Shown here: one piece after another, positions 25,458 through 41,500 of the stretch | Numbering within the stretch: position 1 is the first letter of the stretch | Layout: the number at the start of each line of letters is the position of its first letter | Notes under the pieces: model-generated | What the model saw: only the letters and a program-made list of their open reading frames with translations | What the model was told of the DNA's origin: nothing | The model's database searches: none | Made by a program: the position numbers and the translations under genes | Virus record (IMG/VR): IMGVR_UViG_3300043446_003193 | Coordinates: 124,001-188,000 of that record | Strand: one strand, 5' to 3' | DNA length: 64,000 nt

Positions 25458-27083
25458 TTATAAAGTGTTTAAACCGTTTACGATAATCTTACCGTAGAAT
25501 TCTGGTCTAACGATCTTCTTAGCGTAACGAGTCATAACTCCTCTTCTTGGAGTGAAGTTAGTTGGATCGTACACTAAAGGAGTCATAATCAATGGAACAT
25601 ATGGAGCGTATACAGCACCTGTCTCAAAGAAGTTAGAACCTTTAAATCCTAATAAGATAACGTTCTCAGTCATGTATGGGTTTTTGTAAACATCATATCT
25701 GTTAGAGATAGAACCGATGTTAGTTACACCTGCAGCAAATTGTAAAGCATCTTTACCAGGATTTGCAGAGAAACCGTTCATTGATTCCAAAATAGTTGCA
25801 ACGTTTGGAGATACTACTACGAAGTTAGCACCACCTCTCATTGTTAACTGATGGATTTTGTTAGATACCTTTTGTAATTTGATACCTAAAGTTTGATACC
25901 AAGTACTCTTAGTGTATGCAGAAGCAGCTGCTGCGTTAGAATCTACCGCGAATGCTCCAGTTGCACTATTGTAATCGTATCCAACTCTTGCATCCCAATA
26001 ATCAGTTGTGAATGCGTTTTGTTGTAACATTTCTAAGATTTCCAAATCAATTTCTAAAGAAATGTACTCAGATAACATTTGAGTTAACTCAGCTTCAGCG
26101 TCTACACTATGGTAAGCATTTAAGTCTTGAGCTAATTCAGGAGTCCAAATTGCTTTCAACTTACGAGTCTTAGCAACGATTGGTTCTGATTTCAATTCTA
26201 ATTCAATTTCTGGAATGTCTAAGTTTGAACCTTTATCTTCAAAGTCACCTCTGTTTTCAGCAGATGGTTGCTTATGATAAGATAATGTAGCACCACCAGC
26301 ACTTACACCACCTGCAGATCCTGTACCGTAGAATTCTACTGAAGTACCATTGATCTTAGTGTATTTAGGATAGTAGTTGTTAGCTGTGATAGAACCAGAT
26401 TGTAAGATTTCAAATGCTCTTACACCGTTCCAATCAGCATCAGTTGGTAAAGTTACAGTTACTTTTTTGATACCACCAGCTGCTAAAGAAGCAGATAAGT
26501 CAGCGTCAAAATTGATATCAGCCCAAGATGCAGTTGCAACTGTTGCGTCTAACGCTGCTGATGTATCGTTGATTGTATAACCAAATCTTCCAGCTCCGTA
26601 AAGACCACCTTCAGCAACTTGAGTAGAACCCAATTTGTTACCGTGAGATGCTTCAGAGTTGTAAGTTAAGTTATCCTTACCGAAAGTACCACCTTTACCG
26701 AATAATGAATTACCGTTAAAGTCTGGGTTACCAGCTTGTGAAGTACCATATTTGAAGTCCATGTAGAAAATAAGACCTGAAGGTAAGTTCATAGGTTGTA
26801 CTGAAACGAATTCTTTAGCTGCGATAGAACCGAAGATTCTTCTTACTAAAGGTAACGCAACACCAGCCCATTCTTCAGAACCTGCTGAAGTACCTGTTCT
26901 TGTAGCCTCATCCAATAATTGCTTAGCTTGGTTTTCTAACATTACTGCCATACCATGCTTAGTAGTTTCTGAACCTACTCCTTCAAGTAAGCCAGTTTTT
27001 TCCCATTTGCTTTTCAAACCTCTAGTTTGCTCAAGCATTACGCTCTGTGGGTTAGCGCCTGTCATTAATTTTTTTAAGTCCAT
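25458..27083 (-). CDS. Major capsid protein (T4 gp23 family)
   Basis: LPLVRR, VSVQPMNLPSGLIFY, AKTRKLKA.WT.ELAQDL.A.H..DAEAEL, YAPYVPL, F.PRRGVMTRY are gp23 signatures. Confidence 0.97.
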   Translation of the reverse strand: MDLKKLMTGANPQSVMLEQTRGLKSKWEKTGLLEGVGSETTKHGMAVMLENQAKQLLDEATRTGTSAGSEEWAGVALPLVRRIFGSIAAKEFVSVQPMNLPSGLIFYMDFKYGTSQAGNPDFNGNSLFGKGGTFGKDNLTYNSEASHGNKLGSTQVAEGGLYGAGRFGYTINDTSAALDATVATASWADINFDADLSASLAAGGIKKVTVTLPTDADWNGVRAFEILQSGSITANNYYPKYTKINGTSVEFYGTGSAGGVSAGGATLSYHKQPSAENRGDFEDKGSNLDIPEIELELKSEPIVAKTRKLKAIWTPELAQDLNAYHSVDAEAELTQMLSEYISLEIDLEILEMLQQNAFTTDYWDARVGYDYNSATGAFAVDSNAAAASAYTKSTWYQTLGIKLQKVSNKIHQLTMRGGANFVVVSPNVATILESMNGFSANPGKDALQFAAGVTNIGSISNRYDVYKNPYMTENVILLGFKGSNFFETGAVYAPYVPLIMTPLVYDPTNFTPRRGVMTRYAKKIVRPEFYGKIIVNGLNTL

Positions 27084-28489: not shown

Positions 28490-28510
28490 TAGAAAACTAA
28501 AGAAAATTAG
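28490..28510 (+). repeat. AGAAAACTAA-AGAAAATTAG tandem (candidate operator)
   Basis: TAGAAAACTAAAGAAAA (17 nt) is identical to 55574-55590. Confidence 0.7.
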
Positions 28511-28686
28511 TGATTATACTTATTTTTTCTTATAGTTTCTTCTTTTTGTAACCTTTTTTTAATAGAAGGTTTAGTAAAGTTCTTTCTTTCTCTAAGTTCT
28601 TCTATTTGTTTTATGGACTGAACTTTCTTTTTATATTCCTTTAATGCCCACTCTATGTTTCCGTTTTTCACGTTAACTATTAACAT
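28507..28686 (-). CDS. rpsU: 30S ribosomal protein bS21 (phage-encoded; 59 aa, absent from ORF track)
   Basis: My translation: MLIVNVKNGNIEWALKEYKKKVQSIKQIEELRERKNFTKPSIKKRLQKEETIRKNKYNH*. It has the S21 pattern V...NIE.ALK..K.K......ELR.R..F.KPS..R, with an MLI(I/V) start as in Bacteroidota S21. Confidence 0.9.
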   Translation of the reverse strand: MLIVNVKNGNIEWALKEYKKKVQSIKQIEELRERKNFTKPSIKKRLQKEETIRKNKYNH

Positions 28687-28692
28687 AACTAA

Positions 28693-28992
28693 TTAATATG
28701 GTGTTTGATATTCCAATTGTTTTTTTAATTCTCTTTCGTATTCCTTTTCAATTTTATCTAAATCATCTTTAGCAGATTTAATATCTTCTTGATGTTTTTT
28801 TAATTGATAAAGATATTGGTTTTTTCTATCTTCGTTTTGTTCATCAAAATATGCTTTACTCATCATTTTTTGACGAGTTGTTAATCCTTCATATTTTCTT
28901 ATAGCATCAATGTATGCAGATGATGCTTTTCTAAAACCGGCTCTTATTTTAACTGCTTCTTCTTTTAAAGGAATTAGATTTATTAGTTTCAT
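28693..28992 (-). CDS. Putative internal head protein
   Basis: Coiled-coil 99 aa beginning MKLINLIPLKEE. Confidence 0.5.
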   Translation of the reverse strand: MKLINLIPLKEEAVKIRAGFRKASSAYIDAIRKYEGLTTRQKMMSKAYFDEQNEDRKNQYLYQLKKHQEDIKSAKDDLDKIEKEYERELKKQLEYQTPY

Positions 28993-29363
28993 TATTGTAA
29001 ATTAACTAATTTATATTTTGTAGAATATAATAAAGTTACAATCGTATCAATATCGTTTTGTAACCAACTCATTTGTAACTTTTCATCTTTTCTTAATTTC
29101 TCAACTGCTTTACAAAGTTTTTCAAAATAAGAAATTATATTTTTGATATCATTGTTAGTATCAATACCACTTACTGGTTGAACTTTGATTAATCCGTACT
29201 GTCCTTGATATGCTTCCACTAATCCATCTACTAATCCACCAATTGAATCGTAATATGTACCTAAAGCCAAATGAGCAGATAATGCACCAACACCTTTAAC
29301 TCCCCAATGGAAAGCATGTGCTTGTGTTCTACTGTGTAATAATAATGATGCTAATTGTTCCAT
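28992..29363 (-). CDS. Ferritin/Dps-like four-helix protein (DUF5856-like)
   Basis: QAH.FHW...HLALG.YYD.I..LVD.LVE.YQG.YG...LQN.ID.I..L...T.YKL pattern. Confidence 0.75.
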   Translation of the reverse strand: MEQLASLLLHSRTQAHAFHWGVKGVGALSAHLALGTYYDSIGGLVDGLVEAYQGQYGLIKVQPVSGIDTNNDIKNIISYFEKLCKAVEKLRKDEKLQMSWLQNDIDTIVTLLYSTKYKLVNLQ

Positions 29364-29792
29364 TTATTTACAAGTTTTACATTCGTTAATTCCCAGTCTT
29401 TGTTTCATCACATCTTCAGAAATATCTGCTATTTCAAAATATCTTCCTAATACATGTCCCATATCTTCATAAAGAGCCTCTAATCTTTGTTGTTGTGCTC
29501 TAGCTTCTACTGCTTCCTTTTCAAATGAAGTTTGTAACTTTTTAAGTTCATTCATATTTCTCTTAATAGTTACTCTATCAAACCAATCTCCACCTTCTCT
29601 TAAAGTATATTCTTGTGCTGCATCTGCAATACCACCCAATGTTTCTGCAATTTGCATAATATCAGATTTTCTACTCATACCTTCTCTATGTTGGTTATAT
29701 GTAGAAATTATTTCTAAGAAGTGTTTTTTTAATTCAGAAGGCAATTGTTCTAATTGTTCTTCTTCTTTCAATAAATCTTTTAACTTTATCAT
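29364..29792 (-). CDS. Putative internal head protein
   Basis: 142 aa helical, begins MIKLKDLLKEEE. Confidence 0.5.
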   Translation of the reverse strand: MIKLKDLLKEEEQLEQLPSELKKHFLEIISTYNQHREGMSRKSDIMQIAETLGGIADAAQEYTLREGGDWFDRVTIKRNMNELKKLQTSFEKEAVEARAQQQRLEALYEDMGHVLGRYFEIADISEDVMKQRLGINECKTCK

Positions 29793-30067
29793 CTATGTAC
29801 GATTTTATACTTTTTTAATCTTTGTACTGCCTGAGATAAGTCCTGTGGAGTCATATCTAATGCGTCTACTAATTTAGCAATAACTAATTGTTCTTTTTTT
29901 CTTGGTAAGTTATATGATTTAATAACTTGCAATGCTCTATCTAAAAATCTTTCTACTTTAGAAGGTAGATTAACATCCATATCTTCCAAATCTTCATTCA
30001 TTTCTTCTTTTGAAAGAACTACTGCAGTTGTATAATTAGCCGGTATTAAGTTTATTAACTTTGCCAT
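29789..30067 (-). CDS. Putative internal head protein
   Basis: 92 aa, begins MAKLINLIP; ATGA overlap with the next gene. Confidence 0.5.
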   Translation of the reverse strand: MAKLINLIPANYTTAVVLSKEEMNEDLEDMDVNLPSKVERFLDRALQVIKSYNLPRKKEQLVIAKLVDALDMTPQDLSQAVQRLKKYKIVHR

Positions 30068-30068
30068 A

Positions 30069-30659
30069 TTAGTTTAATTCAATTATGATTTCTCTCATTA
30101 AATCCTGTGATTTACACCACTTACCACATTCTTCTGCCATCTGTTTCCATTGTTTAGATTCGTTCATTGGTGCCATAAATGCTCCATGTGTAGATGGATT
30201 AGAAACAAAATCCCAACCTACTAATTCAAAATCTTCTTGAACCATTACAGTTCCATCTCTTAATTCTTTAACAGACCCTAAACCTCTTGATGAAATACCT
30301 AAACGAATATTATTCTTTAATAATTCTTTTAATATGTTACCAGATGGAGTTGAAAGTATTTCTACTACACCACATACATCATCACCTTCCCAAAAAATTT
30401 CTCTAATATTGTGAGATACATTTTTTAAGTTAATTACTGGAGAATCCGGATGGTCTAATTCACCCAACGCTCTTCTTTCTTTAATGAGTTGTTCGTATTT
30501 TTTACACTCTCTTTCCAATATTTCACGTGGATATCTTCTACCATTTTGGTTTGCAGCCCCAGCTCTTTGAAGAATGCCCTTAACTAAATAAGTACCATTT
30601 TCTTCTTGTTGAAGTTTTGCTTCAAATAAGTGTGTTTCTATTAATAGTCCTTTGTTCAT
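30069..30659 (-). CDS. Prohead core protease (T4 gp21 family)
   Basis: NQNGRRYP, ALGELDHP, INL.NVSH, TPSGNI, LGISSRGLGS, DFVSNPST..AF signatures. Confidence 0.95.
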   Translation of the reverse strand: MNKGLLIETHLFEAKLQQEENGTYLVKGILQRAGAANQNGRRYPREILERECKKYEQLIKERRALGELDHPDSPVINLKNVSHNIREIFWEGDDVCGVVEILSTPSGNILKELLKNNIRLGISSRGLGSVKELRDGTVMVQEDFELVGWDFVSNPSTHGAFMAPMNESKQWKQMAEECGKWCKSQDLMREIIIELN

Positions 30660-30952
30660 TAGTCTTTTTTTCTTAATGCTGCTAAATCAGAACCTTCAAT
30701 TTCTCCGTCTTTATCAACATCAATTTGTTTTTGCTTATCAGTCAATTCTGCTTCATTATATCCTCTTAATCTACCTTCTGATTTTGCTTTATAAGCAGTA
30801 TCAACCGCATTAAAGAATTTTTTCTTATCATCATCACTCATAGAGCTGATATCTTTGCCACTCTTATCTAACATATGTTTAAACAATTGCTGATAATCGT
30901 TTTCTTCTTTAACTACCTGACGGATAAGTTCTTTTAATTGTGATGTTTTCAT
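30659..30952 (-). CDS. Putative internal head protein with EF-hand-like loop
   Basis: MKTSQLKELIRQVVKEE start; C-terminal DVDKDGEIEGSD. Confidence 0.55.
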   Translation of the reverse strand: MKTSQLKELIRQVVKEENDYQQLFKHMLDKSGKDISSMSDDDKKKFFNAVDTAYKAKSEGRLRGYNEAELTDKQKQIDVDKDGEIEGSDLAALRKKD

Positions 30953-31549
30953 TTATTCTGATATTTTACGAATTTGTTGCTCTAATTTTATCAATCTTTC
31001 CTTTATAGTATAAATATGTTTATTTGTTCTTTTCCAAAAATTCTGATTACTTACACCACTTTCTTGCTTTATTTTACCATACCAATTCAAAAACCTTTCC
31101 ATTTCAGCAAGTTGTTTACTTATATTAGAAATTCCTTTTCCTATTTTGTGTGTTGCAGGAACATTTTCTTTTTTAAGTTCTAACCAACGATTTTCTTTAA
31201 CAACACTATATCCAGTTAAATCTGCTTGCCTTTTTCCTTTAGATTTTTCATCACCTTTTTTAGTGAACGCATATGGAGTATTATAAGGACCAGCCGCATC
31301 GCTAGTTGTCATTTCATCAACCATTCGTTCTCTAACCATTTTACGAATGATTTCTTTTATTTTTTGAAGTTCTTCTTCCTTTTTATCAGGTAATCCAGCG
31401 TGTTTTGTAGATGCAAAATCTTTAGCATCTTTATCGGACATTGAATCTGCTGCTTTTTGTACTTCTGGAGATGGGTTTTCCATATCACCTTTTTGAGCGG
31501 CATGAACCATTCCCATAAATCTTTGTTGTGCTTTAGATACTGCTGGCAT
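30953..31549 (-). CDS. DUF3008-like multi-module head protein
   Basis: MPAVSKAQQRFMG...DFASTKH.GLP.K N-terminal module followed by further modules after Glu sites. Confidence 0.6.
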   Translation of the reverse strand: MPAVSKAQQRFMGMVHAAQKGDMENPSPEVQKAADSMSDKDAKDFASTKHAGLPDKKEEELQKIKEIIRKMVRERMVDEMTTSDAAGPYNTPYAFTKKGDEKSKGKRQADLTGYSVVKENRWLELKKENVPATHKIGKGISNISKQLAEMERFLNWYGKIKQESGVSNQNFWKRTNKHIYTIKERLIKLEQQIRKISE

Positions 31550-31565
31550 TTTTAATAAATTTAAA

Positions 31566-31802
31566 TTATTGTAATACTATAACCGAACCGGTTAAATTAA
31601 TTAATGCTGCAGGATAACAAGGAAATATCTGATGGTTATCTATTGAAGCCAAACTTATACTACCACCACCCTCTAATGCTATACTTCCACTAGGATTTCC
31701 TTCCCCTCTCATTATACCCCAAACATTTGGATAGTTTGTACCTGGACCTAATGCAACTGAAGAAGATACTATTGTTACTTTGTATGCTCTATAATTTGTC
31801 AT
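31566..31802 (-). CDS. Small hypothetical (likely exterior head) protein
   Basis: 78 aa beta-rich, contains SSS, SGS and TGS. Confidence 0.5.
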   Translation of the reverse strand: MTNYRAYKVTIVSSSVALGPGTNYPNVWGIMRGEGNPSGSIALEGGGSISLASIDNHQIFPCYPAALINLTGSVIVLQ

Positions 31803-31805
31803 TTT

Positions 31806-32681
31806 TTATTTTTTTATTGATTCCTTTAATTCTTTTAATAATTCATAACTCATCATCAATGCAGATAAATGTTGTTCTTTAATCTTTTTTACAGATTTAA
31901 TTTTTTTAATATTTGCAATTGTTTCTGCTAATTTGATTTTAGTAACTTTATCTGAAATTTTTGAACCAACTTCTTTTAAATTAGTAACTATGTTTGAAAC
32001 TTCATTACTAACATATTCATTTAACTTACCAGTATTATTGATATTGTTGATATATTCTCTCAATAATCCTTTTTGTTCTTCAGTAAGGTTTTTGTATTTT
32101 GTATTAAAACTTTCTACTAATAACTTGTAAGATACTGCTCTTAAATCCTCATCTTGTTTTTTATATTCTTCTAAAACAGCATCTTTCATTTTAGAATCTT
32201 TATTTTGAATAGAAGAGTTGATAATATTTTCTGCAATTGTAAAACGAGATGAAACTATATCAGTTGGGTCAAATTGTTCATCTGATGTAACTGTTTCAAA
32301 AATTTTATAAATAGATGCTAATGTTTTATAATTAGAAATTGGAGATTTAATAAACTCATCTAAATTATAAGTTTCTTTAATCTCTTTAATAAGATTATAT
32401 TTTTCTTTTGTAAGTTTTTTCTCGTCTAATCTTTTACGAGCTTCTAAAATCGTATTGATGAATTGATCAGCTTTTGATTCTGAATTATATTTTTCATTAA
32501 TAAGATATTGGTATAATTTCAATTCTTTTGATAATTCTTTTTTAGAATTAAAATATTCTTTTAGAATTTTTTCTGCTACGGACTTATTTGCAGACATTAT
32601 TTCTGCGGTAATTTGTCTTACTAGTAATTCAAATATAAAACCAGTATTTTTAAATTTAGAATGTTTAATTTTTTTCATCAA
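31806..32681 (-). CDS. Conserved head-morphogenesis protein downstream of portal
   Basis: 291 aa helical, KHSKFKNTG.IFELLVR; ATG at 32678 is the likelier start. Confidence 0.55.
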   Translation of the reverse strand: MMKKIKHSKFKNTGFIFELLVRQITAEIMSANKSVAEKILKEYFNSKKELSKELKLYQYLINEKYNSESKADQFINTILEARKRLDEKKLTKEKYNLIKEIKETYNLDEFIKSPISNYKTLASIYKIFETVTSDEQFDPTDIVSSRFTIAENIINSSIQNKDSKMKDAVLEEYKKQDEDLRAVSYKLLVESFNTKYKNLTEEQKGLLREYINNINNTGKLNEYVSNEVSNIVTNLKEVGSKISDKVTKIKLAETIANIKKIKSVKKIKEQHLSALMMSYELLKELKESIKK

Positions 32682-32699
32682 TTGATATAGTTAATCAGA

Positions 32700-32708
32700 T
32701 ATAAATAT
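32700..32708 (-). promoter_or_regulatory. Putative late promoter motif ATATTTATA
   Basis: Intergenic, upstream of 32681. Confidence 0.65.
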
Positions 32709-32725
32709 ATTTTTCTATTAGTTTA

Positions 32726-34474
32726 TTACTCTTTTGTTAAATCTTCTGTCAAAATCTTCTTTTTGTTACCATTCATATCTTTGAAAACTTCTAAATATGA
32801 ATTTTTTGGAACATATTTTTTAACAGAACCTTCTTTCGCTTTAAGAGTTTTTATTCCTAATGGGTCTCTACCTTCTGGATGGTCATCCTTACCATATCTA
32901 ACTGGGTCTTTAGGTCTACCAACCCCATCTTCCTCTAATTCTGCTTTTAATTTATTTAATTCTTCTTCAACATTTGTAGGGCCTTCGGTTCCAGTTTCTT
33001 TTGCTGGATCTACACCCTGTGTTTCAATTGATGTTAAACGGAATGTTTGTTTAGTATCTTCTAATATTGAAAGTGTTTGCTCATCTTGTTCATCTTTAGC
33101 CATTCCCATTATAGCTTGATACATCCATTCTTTAGAGAACATTTTTGTTTGTTGCATTTGTTGAATTAATGCAACTTTAGATGTATACAACTCTACTTTC
33201 TCTTGCTCATAAATTTTAGATGGAATAGTTAATTCCAATGTAAAGTTTGTTAAACGGTCATCATCAATACCTTGTGCGTATAAGTGGATGATTGCAATTT
33301 TGGTTAATTCAGAAACCATAACTCTTTGTATTCTCTCAATGGTTTTTGCAAATCTAACATCCATCGCTGCAAGAGTTGCTTTACCATTTGTATCTTCTTC
33401 ATATCCTAAATATGCTTTTGGAATTTGAAGTGCTGCCATCAATTTATTTTTAAGATAATTGATGTCTTCAATCATATTGTATTCCAACCCTTTTAGAGTA
33501 TCAATTGAAGTACCATTATCATTACCTCTTACTGGCATATAATAATCTTCAATCAAATTCTGTATATTGTATTTTAAATTATATTCACCCGTTCTTTCAT
33601 CAACAAATGGAACTTTTTTAGATGCATTTATAATTTTTTGCATGTAGTTATCTACCTCATTTGGTGGAATATTACCTACATCAATTTTAAAGATTCGTTT
33701 TTCAGGTGCTCTCATTACTCTATGAATCAACATAGCATCTTCCATCAACATCAATTGTTTCCAAACTCTTCTTGCACCTTCTAACATTGATTTACCATAT
33801 GGAAGGAAGTTGGAATCGTTATTTAAACGGAAGTGAGCAACTTCATAATTTTCAAATTCTTTTTTAGGAGTTTGTCCATAAGAACCCAATGGGTTTTGAT
33901 ATGGAGCGTATACAAATTTAACTCTTTGTGGATTTTGTTGGTCAAACCCTTCAACTCTACTAACTTCATATGAAGAAAGTGGCATAACATTTACAATACC
34001 AATTCCTTCTTCTGCTGCGATTTCTAATTGTAAATATAAATCACCATATTTTACTAAATTTCTTGTCCATGGCCATAAGTTAAATTCAACATTTAAAATA
34101 TCGTAGAAAAGATTTTCTAATATTTGTTTTACATTATCATCTTCGTGATGAATTTTTAAAACATTACCCATTTCATTTCTAGCAGTACACTCATCTGCAT
34201 ATGTATTTAATGCTGATGATAGTATTGGGTCTGTATCCATTGAATCGTAATCTCTGAACAAGTCAATTCTAACTTGTTGATATGCCATTGATGATTCAAT
34301 GTTACCAGTTCCATAATTTGTAACCTTTAATTTCATAAAGCGGTCAACAAGATTAGTGGTCATATTTTGCCACTCATCTGTATCAATTACTTTAACTCCC
34401 TTTTCGGTTTTACGAACTATGGTGTTTGTTGAAAATAATTTTTGTAACCTGCCTAATACTGATTTATCTGCCAT
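32726..34474 (-). CDS. Portal protein (T4 gp20 family)
   Basis: LMLMEDAMLIHR.MRAPE.RIF.IDVGN.P, EDYY.P.RG...T.IDTL.G, EDI.Y...KL..AL.IP. Confidence 0.95.
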   Translation of the reverse strand: MADKSVLGRLQKLFSTNTIVRKTEKGVKVIDTDEWQNMTTNLVDRFMKLKVTNYGTGNIESSMAYQQVRIDLFRDYDSMDTDPILSSALNTYADECTARNEMGNVLKIHHEDDNVKQILENLFYDILNVEFNLWPWTRNLVKYGDLYLQLEIAAEEGIGIVNVMPLSSYEVSRVEGFDQQNPQRVKFVYAPYQNPLGSYGQTPKKEFENYEVAHFRLNNDSNFLPYGKSMLEGARRVWKQLMLMEDAMLIHRVMRAPEKRIFKIDVGNIPPNEVDNYMQKIINASKKVPFVDERTGEYNLKYNIQNLIEDYYMPVRGNDNGTSIDTLKGLEYNMIEDINYLKNKLMAALQIPKAYLGYEEDTNGKATLAAMDVRFAKTIERIQRVMVSELTKIAIIHLYAQGIDDDRLTNFTLELTIPSKIYEQEKVELYTSKVALIQQMQQTKMFSKEWMYQAIMGMAKDEQDEQTLSILEDTKQTFRLTSIETQGVDPAKETGTEGPTNVEEELNKLKAELEEDGVGRPKDPVRYGKDDHPEGRDPLGIKTLKAKEGSVKKYVPKNSYLEVFKDMNGNKKKILTEDLTKE

Positions 34475-34494
34475 TTTGTTTTATATAATTTTTT

Positions 34495-34525
34495 TGAAGA
34501 TACGAAAAATAATTGGAATTACCAA
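34495..34525 (-). promoter_or_regulatory. Bacteroidota-type promoter (variant) upstream of portal
   Basis: Minus strand TTG-N20-TATCTTCA. Confidence 0.5.
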
Positions 34526-35586
34526 GCTCTACAACTCCAATATCTTGCTTTCCATCTTGGGCCTGGATTATCACAATTATGTCTCGCTCTAAAATTCTTT
34601 CTTCTTTCTGGATTATCTTTTTTAATAACCATTCTCTTTCCTTTTGCAGATGTACCACCAAATCCAAAGTTTACTTTAACAACATTTCCTTTGTCGTTTT
34701 TAACATATACTTTAAATTTCTTTACATCACCTTGCATTGGTTTACCTAATTTAACACTTCTACCTTGATATTCTGCTTCATATACACAATTACAATTTGC
34801 CTCTGCAAGTTGTTTGGTATATTCTCTCATAAATTTAATAAAATCATGAGTATCTTGTTCGTTTTCTACATCATACTCATCAATTTCTGTTGCGTCATCT
34901 CCATAGTATCCACCAGGTTGGTCGTTTTCTTTTACAGGTACACAGTTTGGAACCATTTTACCATTTTTCATTTTACCACCAATTTCTCTATATCCATCCC
35001 AACATTCATGTAATGCATTTAGTTCTCCTAAACTTTCATCACATTTTCTCCAACCACCACCTTTTTCTTTGTAGTTTTTTGCGGCCCATCCATTTGCATA
35101 TGCTGATGGGTATACATCAAATTTAGACTTAGCAGCGGATTTAGATGCTGCCCATTTACCAGGGTCTGTTGGGCAATTCTTTTCTAAGAATAAATTTAGT
35201 TTTTCTTCTATATTCATAGTTTCATTTTTTTTCTTTCCTGCGCAATGTGCTTTTTGACTAAAACCTTTTGGATTATTACAGTCTATACTATTTTTATATT
35301 TTTGACTCCAATCTTCATTTTTTGGTTTAGTAGAAACATATATAGGTGTTTTACCTTGTCCACTACTATCTTTACCACCTCTTCCCGCATCGTTTTGTGC
35401 AGCTCTCTTTCTACGAGTTGCACTTTCTTTCTCTTTCTTACTCATTCCGGCAGCTTTTGCAGCGGGAACACATTTGGCATATCCACTTTTATCTCCAGAA
35501 GTTCCACATGGTGGGTGTTTACCATCAACTTTCTTGCCGATGTTTACCCATTTTTCTTTAAACCATTTATTTAAATCTTCGTTCAT
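34519..35586 (-). CDS. Multi-module basic Cys/Trp-rich protein (candidate polyprotein)
   Basis: 355 aa made of about five short basic modules separated by acidic xxE linkers. Confidence 0.7.
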   Translation of the reverse strand: MNEDLNKWFKEKWVNIGKKVDGKHPPCGTSGDKSGYAKCVPAAKAAGMSKKEKESATRRKRAAQNDAGRGGKDSSGQGKTPIYVSTKPKNEDWSQKYKNSIDCNNPKGFSQKAHCAGKKKNETMNIEEKLNLFLEKNCPTDPGKWAASKSAAKSKFDVYPSAYANGWAAKNYKEKGGGWRKCDESLGELNALHECWDGYREIGGKMKNGKMVPNCVPVKENDQPGGYYGDDATEIDEYDVENEQDTHDFIKFMREYTKQLAEANCNCVYEAEYQGRSVKLGKPMQGDVKKFKVYVKNDKGNVVKVNFGFGGTSAKGKRMVIKKDNPERRKNFRARHNCDNPGPRWKARYWSCRAW

Positions 35587-35603
35587 CTATAAGAGTTTCA
35601 ACA

Positions 35604-35612
35604 TATAAATAT
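35604..35612 (-). promoter_or_regulatory. Putative late promoter motif ATATTTATA
   Basis: Intergenic, upstream of 35586. Confidence 0.65.
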
Positions 35613-35617
35613 AAAAT

Positions 35618-37225
35618 TTATCCAATTAACCAGGTTAAATTTTCTGTTCCTTTTTTTCCTAAATCCATTTCATATGGATTTTGTTTTAAATGGTTAGTGG
35701 ATATTAATCCTTCATATTTGTTTATTTGTGTTGCACCTAACATACTTTTAGTTAAGTCAATACCTTCTTGTTTTAAACGAAGTGCTGTATTTCTAACCCA
35801 AAGTCCAATTGCCATAGCCATTGTCAAGTCATCATTATAACCCTTCATAGCTTCTGCTCTTCCAGCTTGCCAAATAAATGTAAATAATTCATCTATCAAT
35901 CTACCAGAACGAATAAGGATATCTTTATCGTTTATGTAGGTATCTAATGTTGAAATAATAAGAGGACGAGTTTTTGATGTAGTAGAGAATCCTGCAACCA
36001 TTTTCTTTTCATCTCTATAAAATTTACTACTCATTTGTTTTTCTACATCAATATATTTTAAATCAACACTCATATAAAATAGATTTCCGTATCCTCTATC
36101 TATACATTGTTGAATTGTAGACCATCCTACGTTTGAGTTTTCTACTACTAGTAATGCGTTGTTCCATTCGGTTGCAACGGCTACTAAAAAGTTTCCAAAG
36201 TCTTTTGTTTCAATTTTACCTCTATATTCTGCAACTTGAGAACTATCCTCAATATCAATAACCTGAAAAGTAGAATAATCCGAACCATCTCCTCTCGCTA
36301 CGTCGGCCACTACCATATATTGTCTATTATAATTTGGATGTTCCCATTTCCAATAGTTACCATCAAACCCAGTTTTTTCTATCGGGTCCATCACATATGT
36401 ATCTTTATACCACATCAATAATTGAGGATCTATTACAGTGTCACCAGAAGATACGAAGTCACAGTCACATTCTTGTGCTGCACCTTTAACTCCTAAGATT
36501 CTTGTTTGTTCATCTCTCCACGCTTGATTTCTTTCAGGGTGTACAGTCCAATGTAGATTAATACAATTAAACCCGTTTGAACCATTTTCTCCTTCAACCC
36601 ACATTTTATGGAACCAGTTACCCACACCATTAGGAGTAGATAATACAATAGCAGCACCACCCGTTGAAAGTGTTGACTGTGCTGATAACCAAATTTCATC
36701 AATATCTCTAATGAATGCGGCCTCATCCACAACTAATAGGGATAGGGCTTCCGAACGTCCTGCATCAGGAGAACTTGCAATTGCTTTTACTTGAGAACCA
36801 TTTTTTAATTTAAGAGAAAGTTTGTTATCTTCAGCTGCTGCGGTTGAACCATCTCTTAACCAAACAGGAAGAAGGTCATGCATTACTCTAACCTTTTCAA
36901 CAAGGTTTTTGGCTACCGTAACTTTTGTTGCAATAACCAATGCATTAAAATCTTGATTAAATAACATTTTCCAAAGAATGTATCCTGCAGAAAGTGTTGA
37001 AAGACCTAACTGACGGGATTTAAGAATAATGTTAAAACGATTATCTTTAAAATCTGTTAAACATCCCTCCTGGAAAGGATAAAGGTGAAAGGGTATTTTT
37101 CCTCTCACCGGGTGCTGAATTACACAATATTTTTTCATAAAGTAAATGGGGTCTCCCGCACACTTACGATATTCTTCAGCGATTATCTCTTTCAGGCTCT
37201 TCTTTGGTTGAGCTTGAGCTTGCAT
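35618..37225 (-). CDS. Terminase large subunit (T4 gp17 family)
   Basis: Walker A ILKSRQLGLST, Walker B LLVVDEAAF, STPNG, RNase H-like ADVARGDGSDYS and NDDL.MA. Confidence 0.96.
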   Translation of the reverse strand: MQAQAQPKKSLKEIIAEEYRKCAGDPIYFMKKYCVIQHPVRGKIPFHLYPFQEGCLTDFKDNRFNIILKSRQLGLSTLSAGYILWKMLFNQDFNALVIATKVTVAKNLVEKVRVMHDLLPVWLRDGSTAAAEDNKLSLKLKNGSQVKAIASSPDAGRSEALSLLVVDEAAFIRDIDEIWLSAQSTLSTGGAAIVLSTPNGVGNWFHKMWVEGENGSNGFNCINLHWTVHPERNQAWRDEQTRILGVKGAAQECDCDFVSSGDTVIDPQLLMWYKDTYVMDPIEKTGFDGNYWKWEHPNYNRQYMVVADVARGDGSDYSTFQVIDIEDSSQVAEYRGKIETKDFGNFLVAVATEWNNALLVVENSNVGWSTIQQCIDRGYGNLFYMSVDLKYIDVEKQMSSKFYRDEKKMVAGFSTTSKTRPLIISTLDTYINDKDILIRSGRLIDELFTFIWQAGRAEAMKGYNDDLTMAMAIGLWVRNTALRLKQEGIDLTKSMLGATQINKYEGLISTNHLKQNPYEMDLGKKGTENLTWLIG

Positions 37226-37872
37226 TATTTTTTAAATTTAATCTTCCAATATACACCTGCCCCAACATATGGTGATAAAGAACCATTTGTTCCATCAACC
37301 GTTCTGTTTGCAACGCCGGCACCTAATTGGTAAATTTTATCTTTTTTAGTTTTTACTATAACACCTGCACCTATATTAGATACCACATCTGCTTTATTAA
37401 ATCCACCATTGAATCCATAATATACTTGTGTTTTAGGTAATTCTTTAACAATAAGAGTTTCTTTAATTTCTCTTTGTTTTACACTTGCATTGAAAGTTCT
37501 ACCTAAAATTTTATTTTGTGTAATAGTATCTGTTACTGCTACTGTACCCAATGAATCAGGCAATCTTAAAGTATCTTTATAAACATTTTTAGCAAAGAAA
37601 TCTTTTAATAACGCTGCTGTGTCTACTATTGTAGGAATTACAACTTCTTTTTCAACAATTGTTTCGTGATAAATATCTGCACCTTTTTTAGTTACAACTT
37701 TAGTTTTTACAACTTCAAATGTATCAATATCATGTTTAATAACTTCATATTTTTTACCATCAATTCTAACAGTTCTTCCTGGCATTTTACCACCTGGATT
37801 AAAATACTCCAATAATACGATTACAACTAATACCGCAATTGCGATGTTTTTTAAATTTAATAATTTTTTCAT
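37225..37872 (-). CDS. Membrane-anchored protein, candidate lysis/spanin-like
   Basis: N-terminal hydrophobic helix, extended stalk, C-terminal amphipathic beta-strands ending YVGAGVYWKIKF. Confidence 0.55.
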   Translation of the reverse strand: MKKLLNLKNIAIAVLVVIVLLEYFNPGGKMPGRTVRIDGKKYEVIKHDIDTFEVVKTKVVTKKGADIYHETIVEKEVVIPTIVDTAALLKDFFAKNVYKDTLRLPDSLGTVAVTDTITQNKILGRTFNASVKQREIKETLIVKELPKTQVYYGFNGGFNKADVVSNIGAGVIVKTKKDKIYQLGAGVANRTVDGTNGSLSPYVGAGVYWKIKFKK

Positions 37873-37876
37873 AATT

Positions 37877-38545
37877 TTATTTTTTAATTAATTCTGGATG
37901 ATTTAACTCAACCAACTTTTCTTCTAATAACCTTTTTCTTTCAATCAATAATTCTATTGCTTCATAAGAATTATCAATATCTTTTTTTAAATCTTTTTTT
38001 ACTTTTTCAATGTCAACATCCCAATCCCATTTTGAAATTGTACCATCTTCATTAACCATTTCAATTTGTTGTTTCACTCCACCTAAAGCCTCTTCCAATC
38101 TATCTTTATATTCTCTTATAAAAGCCAATTTATTTCTGGTTATTTTATAATCTTCATAGTACGGATATGTACCATCTATCTTTAGATTTGTTTCTAGTTT
38201 TGCTAAACAATTTGTACATAATCCTGTTTTACGGATTAGTTTTTTGTCTGCCCAACTATATTTTCCAGTCTCACATTTTTCATCAGAACAAGTATTTAAT
38301 TTTTGTAAATACTGTCTAACATCATCCATTTGTGAATGAGCGATTTTAAAACCTTCTTTTTGTTCCCAAGTCTTACCATCAGAATCGGTCCAGATTTCTC
38401 CAACCTTTCTTTTTTGCTCACTTTCTTTTTCATAACCAAATACTCTTTGAGTATTATCTTCTCTTCCAAAAACCGTGTCTATAATGAGTTTACGAGATTT
38501 GTGCATCCCTTTTGCTTTCTCATCAAAACTTTTTCTTTTTGCCAT
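37877..38545 (-). CDS. Hypothetical protein with putative Zn site
   Basis: CSDEKC...LCTNC; lies upstream of the terminase. Confidence 0.6.
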   Translation of the reverse strand: MAKRKSFDEKAKGMHKSRKLIIDTVFGREDNTQRVFGYEKESEQKRKVGEIWTDSDGKTWEQKEGFKIAHSQMDDVRQYLQKLNTCSDEKCETGKYSWADKKLIRKTGLCTNCLAKLETNLKIDGTYPYYEDYKITRNKLAFIREYKDRLEEALGGVKQQIEMVNEDGTISKWDWDVDIEKVKKDLKKDIDNSYEAIELLIERKRLLEEKLVELNHPELIKK

Positions 38546-38581: not shown

Positions 38582-41500
38582 TTATTCATAAAAAATACCA
38601 AGTATCTGATTTAATGGTGCGAATGTACCTGTAAGTTTATATGTTTTTCCATTATAAAAGAATACCAGTCCTTCATTTGCCACTATTCTTTCAATTCCAC
38701 CCAATCTATTCAATCTACTCAATTCTTGTTTTAATTTTTGAATTTGTGCAGGATTGCCAGAAGTTTTAACTTGATCGGCAACTGTTTTTAATCGTGATTT
38801 CATTGAACGAATTGCCTTATCAGGATGAACCGTCAATACACTACCAACAAATTCTAAAACATCTGCACCTACTCCTAAAAATATTTCTTCAAATGGTTTG
38901 ATATTATCTTTTTGTTGTTTTGCAACATTTACTTTATCATTATTCATTGCCCAGTCTTGTAACTTAGGATTTGATATTGTATTTAATCTAAAAGATTTAT
39001 CACCAAATGCCCATCTTCTAATTAAAGCTTCTTTTGTAAGTTTATCAACTTTAACAGGTGCGTTTGATGTAATCCACCAATCCCACCAACTTTGATGATA
39101 ATCTGCTACATTATCTGAATCTTTTAATCCAAATTCGGATTGTAATTTTGAAATCTTAGAAAGATATTTTGATTGTTTAGAACTTAAATCTTCTGATTTT
39201 GGAATTTCAGTTATTGGTGGTCCTTGAATTGTGTATTTAGATTGAACATCTGCATTTACTTGCTTAATCATACCTGCTAATACACTCTCTGCTCCATCCA
39301 CCTTACCAACAGCGTTTCCTTTTTCATCATATTCTATACAATTGTGAAATACTAAAAGTGCTTGTCCGTAAGGAATAACATTTACCGAAGTTGGCCAAAT
39401 TACTTCAATATTCATAAATTTGGTTCCTTCACCAAATACTTTTTCTCTTTGTTTTTGAGATAATGCAGATACTGCTGCTGAAAGGTCTTTCATTGCGTAA
39501 TTATATGCATCTGTTAAACCACCTCTTCCGCCAAATTTTGATGCAACATCTTCAATGCCCATTGCACTTGCTCCACCATTTGATAAATGTCCTTTATTTC
39601 TAGCTGCAATTAATCTACCATTTTTCCAGCTGATTGCTAACGCCTGTCCATCGGTTTTTTCTCTTACTACACCTAAATCCCCATTAAGTGCTTTTGTAAC
39701 GATATCTTTAAGGTGTCCAAATGTCAAATCCATATCATCAAATGGATGACTCATATGACCATATGCCCCACCTTCCATTAATAGACCTTCTTTTAAAAAT
39801 TCAGTTGGTTTTTCATCAAATCTAGGTAGGTTTCTTGCAGAATATTTTACAGTATATTGGGTTTCATCTTCATCACCCCATATTGCATCTGCTATTGGAA
39901 AATCCATCTGCGTATATCCACCACTATAATACCAATCATCTCCTTTATTTACACCATCGTCTGCGTCTAATTTTCTAGTATGTCCTTTTGGTAAATAAGC
40001 ACCATCGGCTTGAGAATCTGCATCAGCTAATCCACTTATTTCATTTATATACATTTCAATATCTTCGTATAATTTTGAAATTTGTTCGTCAAAGTTAGGT
40101 TTGATGTTTAATTCTTTTTCCATTTTAGTTATCTCATCATATCCCATATTTCTCAATGATCTTGCAACATCATTTGCTTTATATCCGTTTGGATTTCCGA
40201 ATAAGTATGCATTTATTCTTTTTCTGAATGTTGAATTTTTATATGCATCAATTAAATTTTTAAAATGAACATCATTGGAACCCATTTCATCTATTTTACG
40301 AAATGTAGTTGCCTGTCTTCCATTTATTGTTGGCATTCCATGATCATCCTTTCCAATATCTTTAACTTGTACCTTTTTATTTTTAAACTTACCCATTAAA
40401 ATAGTATCACCCGTATCAACATCTACATTAACATCTTCTTTGTTAATTTCAATTGCTGCCAGTTGCTTTTTAGCAGATGCTAACGAATCATGAGTTCCTA
40501 ATCTATCTCCACCATTTTTTGGATATACAACATATTTGTCACCAACTTTTTTTATGGTTTCGTTTACATTTTCATTGTAGATTTGTTTGTTGATTCTACC
40601 ATATTCTCTCATTAGAATTCCTGCAACTGCATGTGCTTGGTTTTCTATTGGAGAACCATCTGCACCATCTTTTTCTAAATTTCTAACTAACCCCAATTCA
40701 TCTTGCTTTCTATGAACCATTTCATGTGCAAGAGTTCTTAGGATATCTGCTGTTAATCTACCTTCGGTTGCAACATATATGGATTTATCTTCAGGATTAT
40801 ATCCACCTAAACTTGTTTTTACTTCTGCGAATTCTCTTCCACCAACTAATGTAACATTTGGTGTTTCTTTTAATTTTAATCTTTTAGTTGCAAATTCTAC
40901 AAAATGTTGAATAGATTGTTGTTTTGTTTCTGATAAATTTTCATTTAAAGAAAACTTACTAATCATTTTTTTATTATTCCAACTATCTGCTATTTTTTCC
41001 GCAATTTCAGGAGTAATATCCATATTTTCTATTCTTTCTGCAATTGCGGCTGCAAATATATTTAGTGCACTTGCTTCATCAATATCTTCGGCAAAAATAG
41101 CAGCTTTTCCTACACCAGTTGCAACTACTTCTGTTACAGCATGTGGTATCAATTCCATAGCCGTATGTTTTACCAACCCAGCAGCACCATGTGCCAATCC
41201 GCCACCAACTGCTGCAAATAATGCTGTTGTAGCTATTTTAATACCAACGGATTTTAAAGCTTTTTTCTGCTTATCATCTAATTTACCACCAGCCATTAAA
41301 GTTTTTACACTACTACCAGCTGTTTTAAATGTATCATATTCATGCTTCAAACCATGCATAATTGCATGTCCAGCACCTTTTGCTTTGTCCATTATAGCCT
41401 GACCCCAACTTCTTCTCTCATCGTGTCCTTCTTTTTTATTTAATAACTTAGAAAAAGTTTGTTTTTCTTCTTTACTCCAATTTTTTACTTTTTCTTGTAT

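What the first reader, a model, noticed from the sequence alone, without database searches (positions are those of the whole stretch)
34519..35586. 355-aa string of basic Cys/Trp mini-domains separated by xxE sites
Seen: MNE|DLNKWFKEKWV..PCG..KCVP..; KNE|DWSQKYK.SIDC..PKGFSQKAHC; FLE|KNCPTDP..W..KFDVYPSAYANGW..; LHE|CWDGY..GKMVPNCVP; VYE|AEYQGR..RARHNC..RYWSCRAW. Most modules have a Cys pair and are Lys/Arg-rich. The gene lies between terminase and portal. Inference: a polyprotein cut by the prohead protease into several small nucleic-acid-binding or effector peptides.
Basis: partly seen in the sequence, partly recalled or inferred. Interest (0 to 1): 0.65.

Follow-up and report, generated by a model that had tools for sequence, protein, structure and literature searches.

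The report
Cleavable string of phage head cargo modules
This gene of a large marine T4-like phage encodes five small, mostly basic Cys-pair domains joined by linkers that carry the cutting motif of the phage's own head protease, so it is most likely cut into several small head-packaged proteins; the cutting is inferred, not shown.

Summary
The ORF is real: window 34519-35586, minus strand, 355 aa, between TerL and a T4-type portal. A Peptidase_S77 (T4 gp21-type) prohead protease lies 4 kb downstream.

It has five conserved modules plus one acidic helical segment. Relatives are very numerous (8,345 cluster representatives), and the 150 best representatives carry the modules in about 40 different orders and combinations.

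In those 150 proteins a [LIVMF]-x-Glu tripeptide ends 0-4 residues before module starts:
- m5: 124/127
- m3: 56/56
- m4: 35/42
- m1: 25/32
- m2: 14/20
- background: 13.6%

P3 is hydrophobic, P2 is free and P1 is Glu, which is the T4 gp21 motif L/I-x-E.

In five phages with an S77 protease, modules follow a leader or linker ending in this motif. In five viruses without one, the same modules begin directly at the start Met.

AlphaFold gives separate units (pTM 0.34) with low confidence just before most junctions. Module 5 folds alone (pLDDT 91.5) and matches no solved structure. A cyanophage homologue was detected in purified virions.

Verdict: probably a polyprotein of T4-internal-protein-like head cargo. 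Cleavage and function are untested.

The parts
34519..35586 (-). Whole ORF P0001, 355 aa plus stop: a string of five modules and one acidic segment.
   Evidence: Pfam DUF5872 scores 30.6 bits against a cut-off of 27.5. Separate PHROGs hit separate segments.
35314..35577 (-). Residues 4-91: module m1 (4-68; conserved Trp8, Trp13, Cys27, Cys39) plus a basic Gly/Lys-rich tail ending KNE91. Predicted 9.5 kDa, pI 10.0.
   Evidence: phrog_23735 (81-position profile) covers residues 4-68. DUF5872 profile positions 55-102 match here. 25/32 internal m1 starts in relatives follow phi-x-E. pLDDT is below 50 at residues 83-90.
35182..35313 (-). Residues 92-135: module m2 (92-120; Cys103, His114 and Cys115 all 100% conserved) plus a helix ending FLE135.
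   Evidence: 14/20 internal m2 starts follow phi-x-E. In this protein P3 of the upstream site is Lys (KNE91), which is non-canonical.
35005..35181 (-). Residues 136-194: module m3 (136-182) plus a linker ending LHE194.
   Evidence: phrog_27331 (50-position profile) matches here, as do DUF5872 profile positions 1-39. 56/56 m3 starts follow phi-x-E. Phage DSL-LC04 has it as a standalone 62-aa ORF.
34927..35004 (-). Residues 195-220: module m4, a predicted beta-hairpin with Cys195 and Cys215, ending VKE220.
   Evidence: AF2 strands 199-207 and 210-217. 35/42 m4 starts follow phi-x-E. Cys conservation is 95% and 100%.
34777..34926 (-). Residues 221-270: acidic segment (pI 4.1, net -11) with an amphipathic helix at 243-264 and four phi-x-E sites (IDE237, MRE255, LAE262, VYE270). 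Likely a propeptide or leader for m5.
   Evidence: The same 'lead' segment precedes m5 in 31 lead-m5 proteins among the 150 representatives.
34522..34776 (-). Residues 271-355: module m5, 9.9 kDa, pI 10.6, net +17, with invariant Cys338/Cys352 and Trp350/Trp355. It is an independent fold.
   Evidence: phrog_7595 (96-position profile) matches here. Thousands of standalone relatives at 82-92% identity exist. AF2 on m5 alone gives pLDDT 91.5 and pTM 0.78. 124/127 m5 starts follow phi-x-E. In viruses without S77 the ORF starts with Met directly at this point.
30069..30659 (-). Prohead protease, T4 gp21 type: the presumed processing enzyme.
   Evidence: Peptidase_S77 1.2e-29; phrog_207 4.6e-53.
29364..29792 (-). 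142-aa head-module protein beginning with the decapeptide MIKLKDLLKE. Two distant genes of the same genome share this decapeptide, and it resembles the N-termini of longer P0001 relatives. Candidate capsid-targeting sequence.
   Evidence: The T4 CTS is 10 residues with processing determinants at residues 8 and 10 (PMC9026906).
32726..34474 (-). T4-type portal, downstream neighbour.
   Evidence: Portal_T4 1e-73.
35618..37225 (-). Large terminase, upstream neighbour.
   Evidence: Terminase_6N 1.7e-7; phrog_2 4.2e-46.
25458..27083 (-). Major capsid protein. Four phi-x-E sites lie in its first 59 residues (likely propeptide).
   Evidence: phrog_138 1.7e-75; N-terminal sites listed.

Best explanation
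P0001 is a fusion of several small cargo proteins of the phage head, comparable to the T4 internal proteins. Most likely it enters the prohead with the assembly core. There the gp21-type protease (30069-30659) would cut after Glu in hydrophobic-x-Glu motifs at the module junctions.

Confident sites are FLE135, LHE194, VKE220 and VYE270, plus extra sites inside the acidic segment 221-270. Cleavage at KNE91 is doubtful.

Cutting would release small, basic domains that each carry a Cys pair:
- roughly residues 4-135, or 4-91 plus 92-135
- residues 136-194
- residues 195-220
- residues 271-355

These would stay with the packaged DNA and presumably enter the host with it. The acidic segment 221-270 would act as a charge-masking or core-binding propeptide and be degraded.

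What is shown: modularity, shuffling, the conserved junction motif, its link with S77 proteases, and independent folding of m5.

What is inferred: entry into the head, actual cleavage, and the role of the products (DNA charge neutralisation or condensation, or an early effector).
For: 1. Setting. The gene lies in a T4-type head module that includes an S77 protease.
2. Shuffling. About 40 module orders occur in the 150 best of 8,345 representatives. Extra modules are inserted exactly at the junctions in close relatives.
3. Junction motif. phi-x-E ends 0-4 aa before module starts:
- m5: 124/127
- m3: 56/56
- m4: 35/42
- m1: 25/32
- m2: 14/20
- control position (start of 'lead'): 11/63
- background: 13.6%
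4. Logo. P3 is L/I/V/F/M, P2 and P4-P6 are variable, P1 is Glu. This equals T4 gp21's L/I-x-E (PMC9026906).
5. Depletion. The motif is about 10-fold rarer inside modules (0.38 versus 4.0 per 100 aa). Per Glu the share is 0.19 versus 0.40.
6. Link with the protease.
- Five genomes with S77 (HTVC008M, C48C1, Melnitz, S-SCSM1, S-BM3) have a leader or linker ending in phi-x-E before the modules.
- Five without S77 (HTVC026P, Aegir, CRP-902, a Nitrosopumilaceae spindle virus, DSL-LC04) start the module at Met, exactly at the predicted P1'.
- Fisher p = 0.008.
7. Standalone m5 proteins have the T4-internal-protein layout: amphipathic N-terminal leader, acidic stretch, phi-x-E, basic domain.
8. Candidate CTS. 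Longer relatives begin with a 10-residue leader nearly identical to the one shared by three genes of this genome.
9. Structure. AF2 gives pTM 0.34, with pLDDT below 50 at 83-90, 186-193, 220-240 and 264-267. m5 alone gives pLDDT 91.5.
10. Virion evidence. The cyanophage homologue SSCSM1_29 is annotated 'virion protein' in a genome whose virion proteins were identified by mass spectrometry of CsCl-purified particles (PMC9602691).
Against: - There is no direct evidence of cleavage, or of virion location, for this protein or any close relative.
- P0001 itself has no N-terminal targeting leader (it starts MNE|D), so how it would enter the prohead is open.
- KNE91 has Lys at P3.
- FLE135 lies at the end of a confidently predicted helix (pLDDT about 80).
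- I set the module boundaries right after the Glu residues. Conservation alone therefore cannot separate 'cleavage site' from 'first conserved residues of the domain'.
- The representatives are not phylogenetically independent.
- The S77 association rests on ten genomes picked from hit lists.
- Standalone m5 genes in related contigs lie among small unknown genes near lysins, not in head modules.
- The modules also exist in viruses with no such protease, so their core function does not depend on processing.
Confidence: 0.65

Rival explanations
1. Partial processing only. The protease removes or degrades the acidic segment 221-270 and frees m5. Residues 4-220 stay as one multi-domain basic protein, and the upstream junction motifs are not used.
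For: The m5 junction is the cleanest case (124/127; P1' is Ala in 94%) and is the only one with a propeptide-like segment. KNE91 is non-canonical. FLE135 lies in a predicted helix.
Against: m3 starts follow phi-x-E in 56/56 cases and m4 in 35/42, including proteins with different upstream partners. m3 exists as a separate ORF starting a few residues from the predicted cut.
Confidence: 0.2
2. No cleavage. The protein is an intact beads-on-a-string virion or DNA-associated protein, and the hydrophobic-x-Glu tripeptide is a structural cap or linker feature of each mini-domain.
For: Low-confidence linkers are normal for any multi-domain protein. No proteolysis data exist. P0001 lacks a targeting leader. 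The S-SCSM1 annotation says only that the protein is in virions, not that it is cut.
Against: - Five unrelated modules share the same prefix.
- The prefix is missing when the module starts a protein in viruses without S77.
- P2 is free, as in gp21 sites.
- The motif is depleted inside modules.
Confidence: 0.12
3. Not a head component. The protein is a cytoplasmic nucleic-acid-binding or regulatory protein that merely sits between the terminase and portal genes.
For: The nearest isolates (Flavobacterium phage immuto, Microcystis phage Mel-JY01) have TerL directly followed by portal, so the gene is an insertion. Standalone modules in podophages and siphophages lie outside structural modules.
Against: - The cyanophage homologue was detected in virions.
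- Protease-type junctions are present.
- CTS-like leaders occur in relatives.
- DSL-LC04 has the modules between the capsid and adaptor genes.
Confidence: 0.05

Closest known systems
T4 internal proteins IPI, IPII, IPIII and Alt (capsid targeting sequence plus gp21 cleavage)
   Same: - Small basic proteins packaged in a T4-type head.
- A gp21-family protease is present.
- The cut motif is L/I-x-Glu.
- Relatives carry a 10-residue N-terminal leader with Leu at position 8 and Glu at position 10.
- Cargo genes are variable and shuffled between related phages.
   Different: - Several cargo domains are fused in one ORF with internal sites, rather than one cargo per gene.
- No sequence match to T4 IP families was found.
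- P0001 lacks the N-terminal leader.
- The domains carry conserved Cys pairs.
- The modules also occur in viruses without the protease.
phiKZ / 201phi2-1 / SPN3US head and ejection proteins processed by gp21-like proteases
   Same: Many head-internal proteins are cut after Glu at a three-residue motif, with several redundant sites in long propeptides (PMC9026906, PMC10052503).
   Different: - Their motif has Ser/Ala at P3 (S/A-x-E, AXE), not Leu/Ile/Val.
- Multiple cuts there serve to clear propeptides, not to release several mature domains.
- There is no sequence relation.
Pfam DUF5872 and PHROGs 23735, 727, 7595 and 27331 (all of unknown function)
   Same: P0001 passes the DUF5872 cut-off (30.6 versus 27.5 bits). 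Individual PHROG profiles of 50-96 positions match single modules.
   Different: DUF5872 is itself a two-module composite in the order m3 then m1, the reverse of P0001. None of these families has an assigned function or a described processing.
Cyanomyovirus gene cluster T4-GC_119 (e.g. S-BM3 SBM3_00185, S-SCSM1 SSCSM1_29)
   Same: It is homologous over residues about 2-220. It lies beside the terminase genes, is multi-module with phi-x-E before each module, and is a virion protein in S-SCSM1.
   Different: - It carries a different C-terminal module, one that is also standalone in DSL-LC04.
- It has different leaders.
- m5 is absent.
- Identity is about 30-40%.
Adenovirus core protein precursors pVII and pX, cut by the viral protease (from general knowledge, not tested here)
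   Same: Basic DNA-associated peptides are made as precursors and trimmed inside the capsid by the virion protease.
   Different: The virus, protease and sequences are unrelated. This is an analogy only.

Membership tests
T4-type capsid-targeted internal proteins | The phage encodes a gp21-family (Peptidase_S77) prohead protease. | tested here: met
   Window 30069-30659: PF03420 1.2e-29; phrog_207 4.6e-53.
T4-type capsid-targeted internal proteins | An N-terminal capsid targeting sequence of about 10-20 residues ending in L/I-x-E. | tested here: not met
   P0001 starts MNE|D. About 12% of close relatives, and many standalone m5 proteins, do carry such a leader. Three genes of this genome share one.
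T4-type capsid-targeted internal proteins | L/I-x-E motif at the boundary of the mature product. | tested here: met
   FLE135, LHE194, VKE220 and VYE270 fit in P0001. The logo over relatives has P3 L/I/V/F/M, P2 free and P1 Glu. KNE91 and MNE3 do not fit.
T4-type capsid-targeted internal proteins | Actual cleavage by the protease, and presence of the products in mature heads. | not testable with these tools
   The only indirect support is the homologue SSCSM1_29, annotated as a virion protein from mass spectrometry.
T4-type capsid-targeted internal proteins | Sequence homology to T4 IPI, IPII, IPIII or Alt. | tested here: not met
   Pfam and PHROGs scans returned only families of unknown function.
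Pfam DUF5872 | Whole-protein score above the gathering cut-off of 27.5 bits. | tested here: met
   30.6 bits, E 5.7e-7, in two stretches. The profile is a composite of m3 and m1.
Viral polyprotein (several mature products from one ORF) | Independently folding units that also exist as separate genes. | tested here: met
   AF2 pTM 0.34 for the whole protein against 0.78 for m5 alone. Standalone m3 and m5 ORFs exist. Module orders are shuffled.
Viral polyprotein (several mature products from one ORF) | Cognate protease sites at every junction. | tested here: inconclusive
   Four junctions fit the motif. The m1/m2 junction (KNE91) does not fit in this protein, although 14/20 relatives have phi-x-E there.
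phiKZ-like processed head and inner-body proteins | S/A/G-x-E cleavage motif. | tested here: not met
   P3 at the junctions is L/I/V/F/M in about 90-100% for m1, m3 and m5, and about 75% for m2 and m4. The phiKZ motif is as given in PMC9026906.

The most novel reading that the evidence does not exclude
Abundant marine T4-like phages (this Bacteroidota-phage-like lineage, cyanomyoviruses, pelagimyophages) may carry a very large, unrecognised repertoire of capsid cargo.

In this reading, a set of small Cys-pair domains of unknown fold is freely shuffled into polyproteins. The shuffling works because one three-residue protease motif, plus a portable leader, is enough to load and release any domain. 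The released domains would act as protamine-like DNA counter-ions, or as first-wave effectors injected with the genome.

The same domains in podophages, siphophages and an archaeal spindle-shaped virus would be the unprocessed form of this cargo.
Probability: 0.35. Interest if true: 0.8.

Novelty: new variant of a known kind. Interest (0 to 1): 0.62.

Why it matters
- T4's capsid-targeting and gp21-processing system is a classic, but it is known mainly from one-cargo-per-gene internal proteins in coliphages.
- Here the same logic appears to have produced a combinatorial family of multi-cargo polyproteins. The family is very large (8,345 clusters at 50% identity) in ocean viruses. It includes a gene found in 262 phage records, mostly cyanomyoviruses, that is detected in virions.
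- If confirmed, this would assign a location and a maturation route to several widespread domains of unknown function (DUF5872; PHROGs 7595, 23735, 27331).
- It would give a simple sequence rule for predicting packaged proteins in uncultured T4-like phages.
- It would point to small injected proteins as a major variable compartment of marine phage-host interaction.
- Module 5 is 67-88% identical across proteins that are otherwise under 50% identical, and it has no known fold. That makes it a good target for structure and function work.

Tried and rejected
Searches that gave nothing useful:
- Megablast of window 30000-38000 against phage records found no match.
- Supplement search of the S-SCSM1 paper for the homologue or its peptides found nothing.
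- The genome search on metagenome loci L005, L006 and L010, to ask whether carriers of standalone m5 also have a P0001-like gene, failed because those records are not held.
- Fold searches found no significant match:
  - Whole model against PDB: best E 0.78.
  - m5 against PDB by Foldseek: best E 0.76.
  - m5 against 48,161 PDB representatives by VIA-align: best Z 2.2.
  - BFVD gave only uncharacterised viral proteins. Two larger m5-containing proteins are named ChaB and XkdF. I treat this as a weak lead only.
- Pfam on single modules at E up to 10 gave only DUF5872 and noise.
- The atlas feature search returned only viral hypothetical clusters and a DUF5754 cluster.

Ideas considered and rejected:
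- That MNEDLNKWFKE is itself a targeting leader. The segment is part of the conserved, folded m1 (helix 5-10), and Glu11 is not conserved in distant relatives.
- That the opposite-strand ORFs under the gene (78-109 aa) are genes. They are low-complexity shadows of a conserved coding frame.

Tools not used:
- Complex prediction, because no specific protein-protein binding claim is made.
- The read-mapping tools, because they cannot show protein processing.

Full report
**1. Observation**

- Composition: 15.2% Lys, 4.5% Arg, 12 Cys and 10 Trp.
- Neighbours: large terminase upstream (35618-37225), T4-type portal downstream (32726-34474, Portal_T4 1e-73).
- Further downstream are small head-module genes and a Peptidase_S77 prohead protease (30069-30659, 1.2e-29).
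- Beyond these lie an acidic scaffold-like 405-aa protein and the major capsid protein (25458-27083).

The window is part of a complete 209-kb virus record. By portal similarity, the nearest isolates are Microcystis phage Mel-JY01 (51%) and Flavobacterium phage immuto (47%). In both, TerL is directly followed by the portal gene. The gene is therefore an insertion into a conserved head block.

**2. Anatomy**

Family scans hit segments, not the whole protein:
- phrog_23735 (81 positions) on residues 4-68
- phrog_27331 (50 positions) on residues 146-175
- phrog_7595 (96 positions) on residues 271-355

Pfam DUF5872 passes its cut-off. It turns out to be a composite of m3 followed by m1.

I defined these units:
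- m1: residues 4-68
- m2: residues 92-120
- m3: residues 136-182
- m4: residues 195-219
- 'lead': acidic helical segment, residues 233-270
- m5: residues 271-355

If the protein is cut at the candidate sites, each piece carries two Cys. All pieces are basic except 221-270, which has pI 4.1 and net charge -11. m5 has pI 10.6 and net charge +17.

**3. Relatives and shuffling**

- The word search saturated at 8,000 relatives.
- The exhaustive search found 8,345 cluster representatives at E <= 0.001. Among the 150 best listed, lengths run from 130 to 1,239 aa.
- Close relatives (68-86% identity) differ by whole extra modules inserted exactly at the junctions. One such addition is an N-terminal leader plus zinc ribbon.
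- Among the 150 best representatives the modules occur in about 40 architectures. Examples are m3-m1-m5, m5-m4-m3, m4-m1-m2 and m1-m5-m3.
- m5 alone occurs in thousands of 87-158-aa proteins at 82-92% identity.
- m5 is 67-88% identical across proteins that are otherwise under 50% identical.

The homologue over residues 2-220 is found in 262 phage records, mostly T4-like cyanophages. It is gene cluster T4-GC_119, lying beside the terminase genes. In S-SCSM1 it is annotated 'virion protein', and that paper identified virion proteins by mass spectrometry of CsCl-purified particles (PMC9602691).

**4. The junction motif**

I built HMMs of the modules and applied them to the 150 best representatives. 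A [LIVMF]-x-Glu tripeptide ends 0-4 residues before the module start as follows:

| Position | With motif | Binomial p |
|---|---|---|
| m5 start | 124/127 | 8e-103 |
| m3 start | 56/56 | 3e-49 |
| m4 start | 35/42 | 5e-24 |
| m1 start | 25/32 | 3e-16 |
| m2 start | 14/20 | 1e-8 |
| start of 'lead' (control) | 11/63 | 0.23 |
| background | 13.6% | - |

- Logos show P3 as Leu/Ile/Val/Phe/Met and P1 as Glu. P2 and P4-P6 are variable.
- This is the specificity reported for T4 gp21: cleavage after Glu in L/I-x-E (PMC9026906).
- The motif is about ten-fold rarer inside modules than outside (0.38 versus 4.0 per 100 residues).
- Per Glu residue, the share with a hydrophobic P3 is 0.19 inside modules against 0.40 outside.

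**5. Link to the protease**

Genomes with Peptidase_S77:
- HTVC008M, C48C1, Melnitz, S-SCSM1 and S-BM3.
- Their modules are preceded by a leader or linker ending in the motif. For m5 the tripeptides are LEE, LTE and MME.

Viruses without Peptidase_S77:
- Pelagibacter phages HTVC026P and Aegir, Roseobacter phage CRP-902, a Nitrosopumilaceae spindle-shaped virus, and phage DSL-LC04.
- In the first four, the m5 ORF begins with Met directly at the residue matching Ala271.
- In DSL-LC04, a standalone m3 begins a few residues from the position matching Lys136.

These results come; Fisher p = 0.008. The tripeptide is therefore not needed for the fold, and it appears where the protease exists.

**6. 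Leaders**

Standalone m5 proteins from metagenomes have an amphipathic N-terminal leader, an acidic stretch, the motif, and then the basic domain. This is the layout of T4 internal proteins, whose 10-19-residue capsid targeting sequences are removed by gp21.

Three genes of this genome, far apart on the chromosome, begin with the same decapeptide M(I/L)KLKDLLKE:
- window 29364-29792
- G000 40611-41618
- G000 27484-27837

It has Leu at position 8 and Glu at position 10. Those are the positions reported as processing determinants in the T4 IPIII targeting sequence. Longer relatives of P0001 begin with a near-identical decapeptide followed by a zinc ribbon, and then a Val/Ile-Asn-Glu junction in front of m1.

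P0001 itself starts Met-Asn-Glu. This looks like what remains of that junction, so it lacks the leader. Residues 221-270 resemble the propeptide that precedes m5 in 31 'lead-m5' proteins, and they may supply the core-binding function. This point is open.

**7. Structure**

AlphaFold2 on the whole protein gives mean pLDDT 77 but pTM 0.34. pLDDT is below 50 at residues 75-77, 83-90, 186-193, 220-240 and 264-267. These stretches lie immediately before KNE91, LHE194 and VYE270, and after VKE220. FLE135 sits at the end of a confident helix.

m5 alone gives pLDDT 91.5 and pTM 0.78: a beta sheet followed by two helices. It has no significant match in the PDB by two methods. It matches only uncharacterised viral models in BFVD.

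Cys conservation:
- The pairs are conserved at 90-100% in m1, m2, m4 and m5.
- In m3, Cys138 and Cys182 are each kept in only 22% of relatives.
- The conserved pairing of Cys within each small module would fit a pairwise role such as a disulfide or a metal site. Which one applies is untested.

**8. Interpretation**

The best reading is a polyprotein of head cargo processed by the gp21-type protease. It is a fused, shuffled version of the T4 internal-protein system (confidence 0.65).

Firm results:
- modularity
- shuffling
- the conserved protease-type tripeptide and its link with S77
- independent folding of m5

Inferred points:
- loading into the prohead
- cleavage
- the role of the products

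Weak points:
- There is no proteolysis data.
- P0001 has no leader.
- KNE91 is non-canonical.
- I chose the module boundaries just after the Glu residues.
- The representatives are related to one another.
- The genome association test is small (ten genomes).
- Standalone m5 genes lie outside head modules.

Rivals are partial processing that frees only m5 (0.2), no processing (0.12), and a non-virion role (0.05).

**9. Novelty**

The library searches found no paper describing these modules or a polyprotein of phage internal proteins. DUF5872 is mentioned once, in a giant-virus genome paper.

In phiKZ-like phages, multiple cuts are known, but they clear long propeptides and use S/A-x-E.

I rate this a new variant of a known kind, with interest 0.62.

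Noticed in passing
window 29364-29792; G000:C1:40611-41618 (L020); G000:C1:27484-27837 (L021): Three otherwise unrelated genes of the 209-kb genome begin with the same decapeptide M(I/L)KLKDLLKE followed by acidic residues. This is a candidate capsid targeting sequence marking packaged proteins. The 335-aa and 117-aa proteins have no Pfam match.
   Followed up: partly
window 28507-28686 (-): A 59-aa ORF inside the head module is a ribosomal protein S21 homologue (Pfam Ribosomal_S21 5.5e-13). Microcystis phage Mel-JY01 has an S21 gene at the matching place.
   Followed up: partly
window 38582-42667 (-); L016:842-2794 (Melnitz gp18): The 1361-aa ORF upstream starts with a cytidylyltransferase-like domain (PF01467 8.3e-7). 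Methylophilales phage Melnitz gp18 (651 aa) starts with a similar nucleotidyltransferase-like motif, seen by eye and not scanned, and carries m4 and m5 further on, with a hydrophobic-x-Glu before m5. In S-SCSM1 an NMN adenylyltransferase was found in the virion proteome. Packaged nucleotidyltransferases may be a theme.
   Followed up: no
window 30953-31549 (-): A 198-aa protein between the portal and protease genes begins with a DUF3008 module (Pfam 1.4e-6) that hits several PHROGs of very different lengths (91-587 positions). It contains seven hydrophobic-x-Glu sites. It looks like another shuffled cargo-type module.
   Followed up: no
window 27107-28324 (-): A 405-aa, extremely acidic, helical protein just upstream of the capsid gene has 18 hydrophobic-x-Glu sites and an N-terminus MANSKLLKE. 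It is probably the scaffold, cut into many pieces as T4 gp22 is. It has no PHROG match.
   Followed up: no
window 28992-29363 (-): A 123-aa DUF5856 protein (Pfam 4.6e-14) also matches phrog_858 ('starvation-inducible transcriptional regulator'). It sits inside the head morphogenesis block.
   Followed up: no
L017:2498-2749 (Nitrosopumilaceae spindle-shaped virus ORF8): Module m5 (about 40% identity, Cys pair kept) is encoded by an archaeal spindle-shaped virus as well as by tailed phages of several types. This is an unusually wide spread for an 85-aa domain.
   Followed up: partly
L003:3506-3790 and L002:3683-4696: The C-terminal module of the cyanophage homologues, which differs from m5, also occurs as a standalone 94-aa ORF in phage DSL-LC04, next to a standalone m3 and between the capsid/cement and adaptor genes.
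   Followed up: partly
BFVD entries A0A6J5T6Y7 and A0A6J5M6S8: Two larger viral proteins that contain an m5-like domain are named XkdF (a phage protease-like family) and ChaB in UniProt. This hints at fusions of m5 to other head-associated domains.
   Followed up: no
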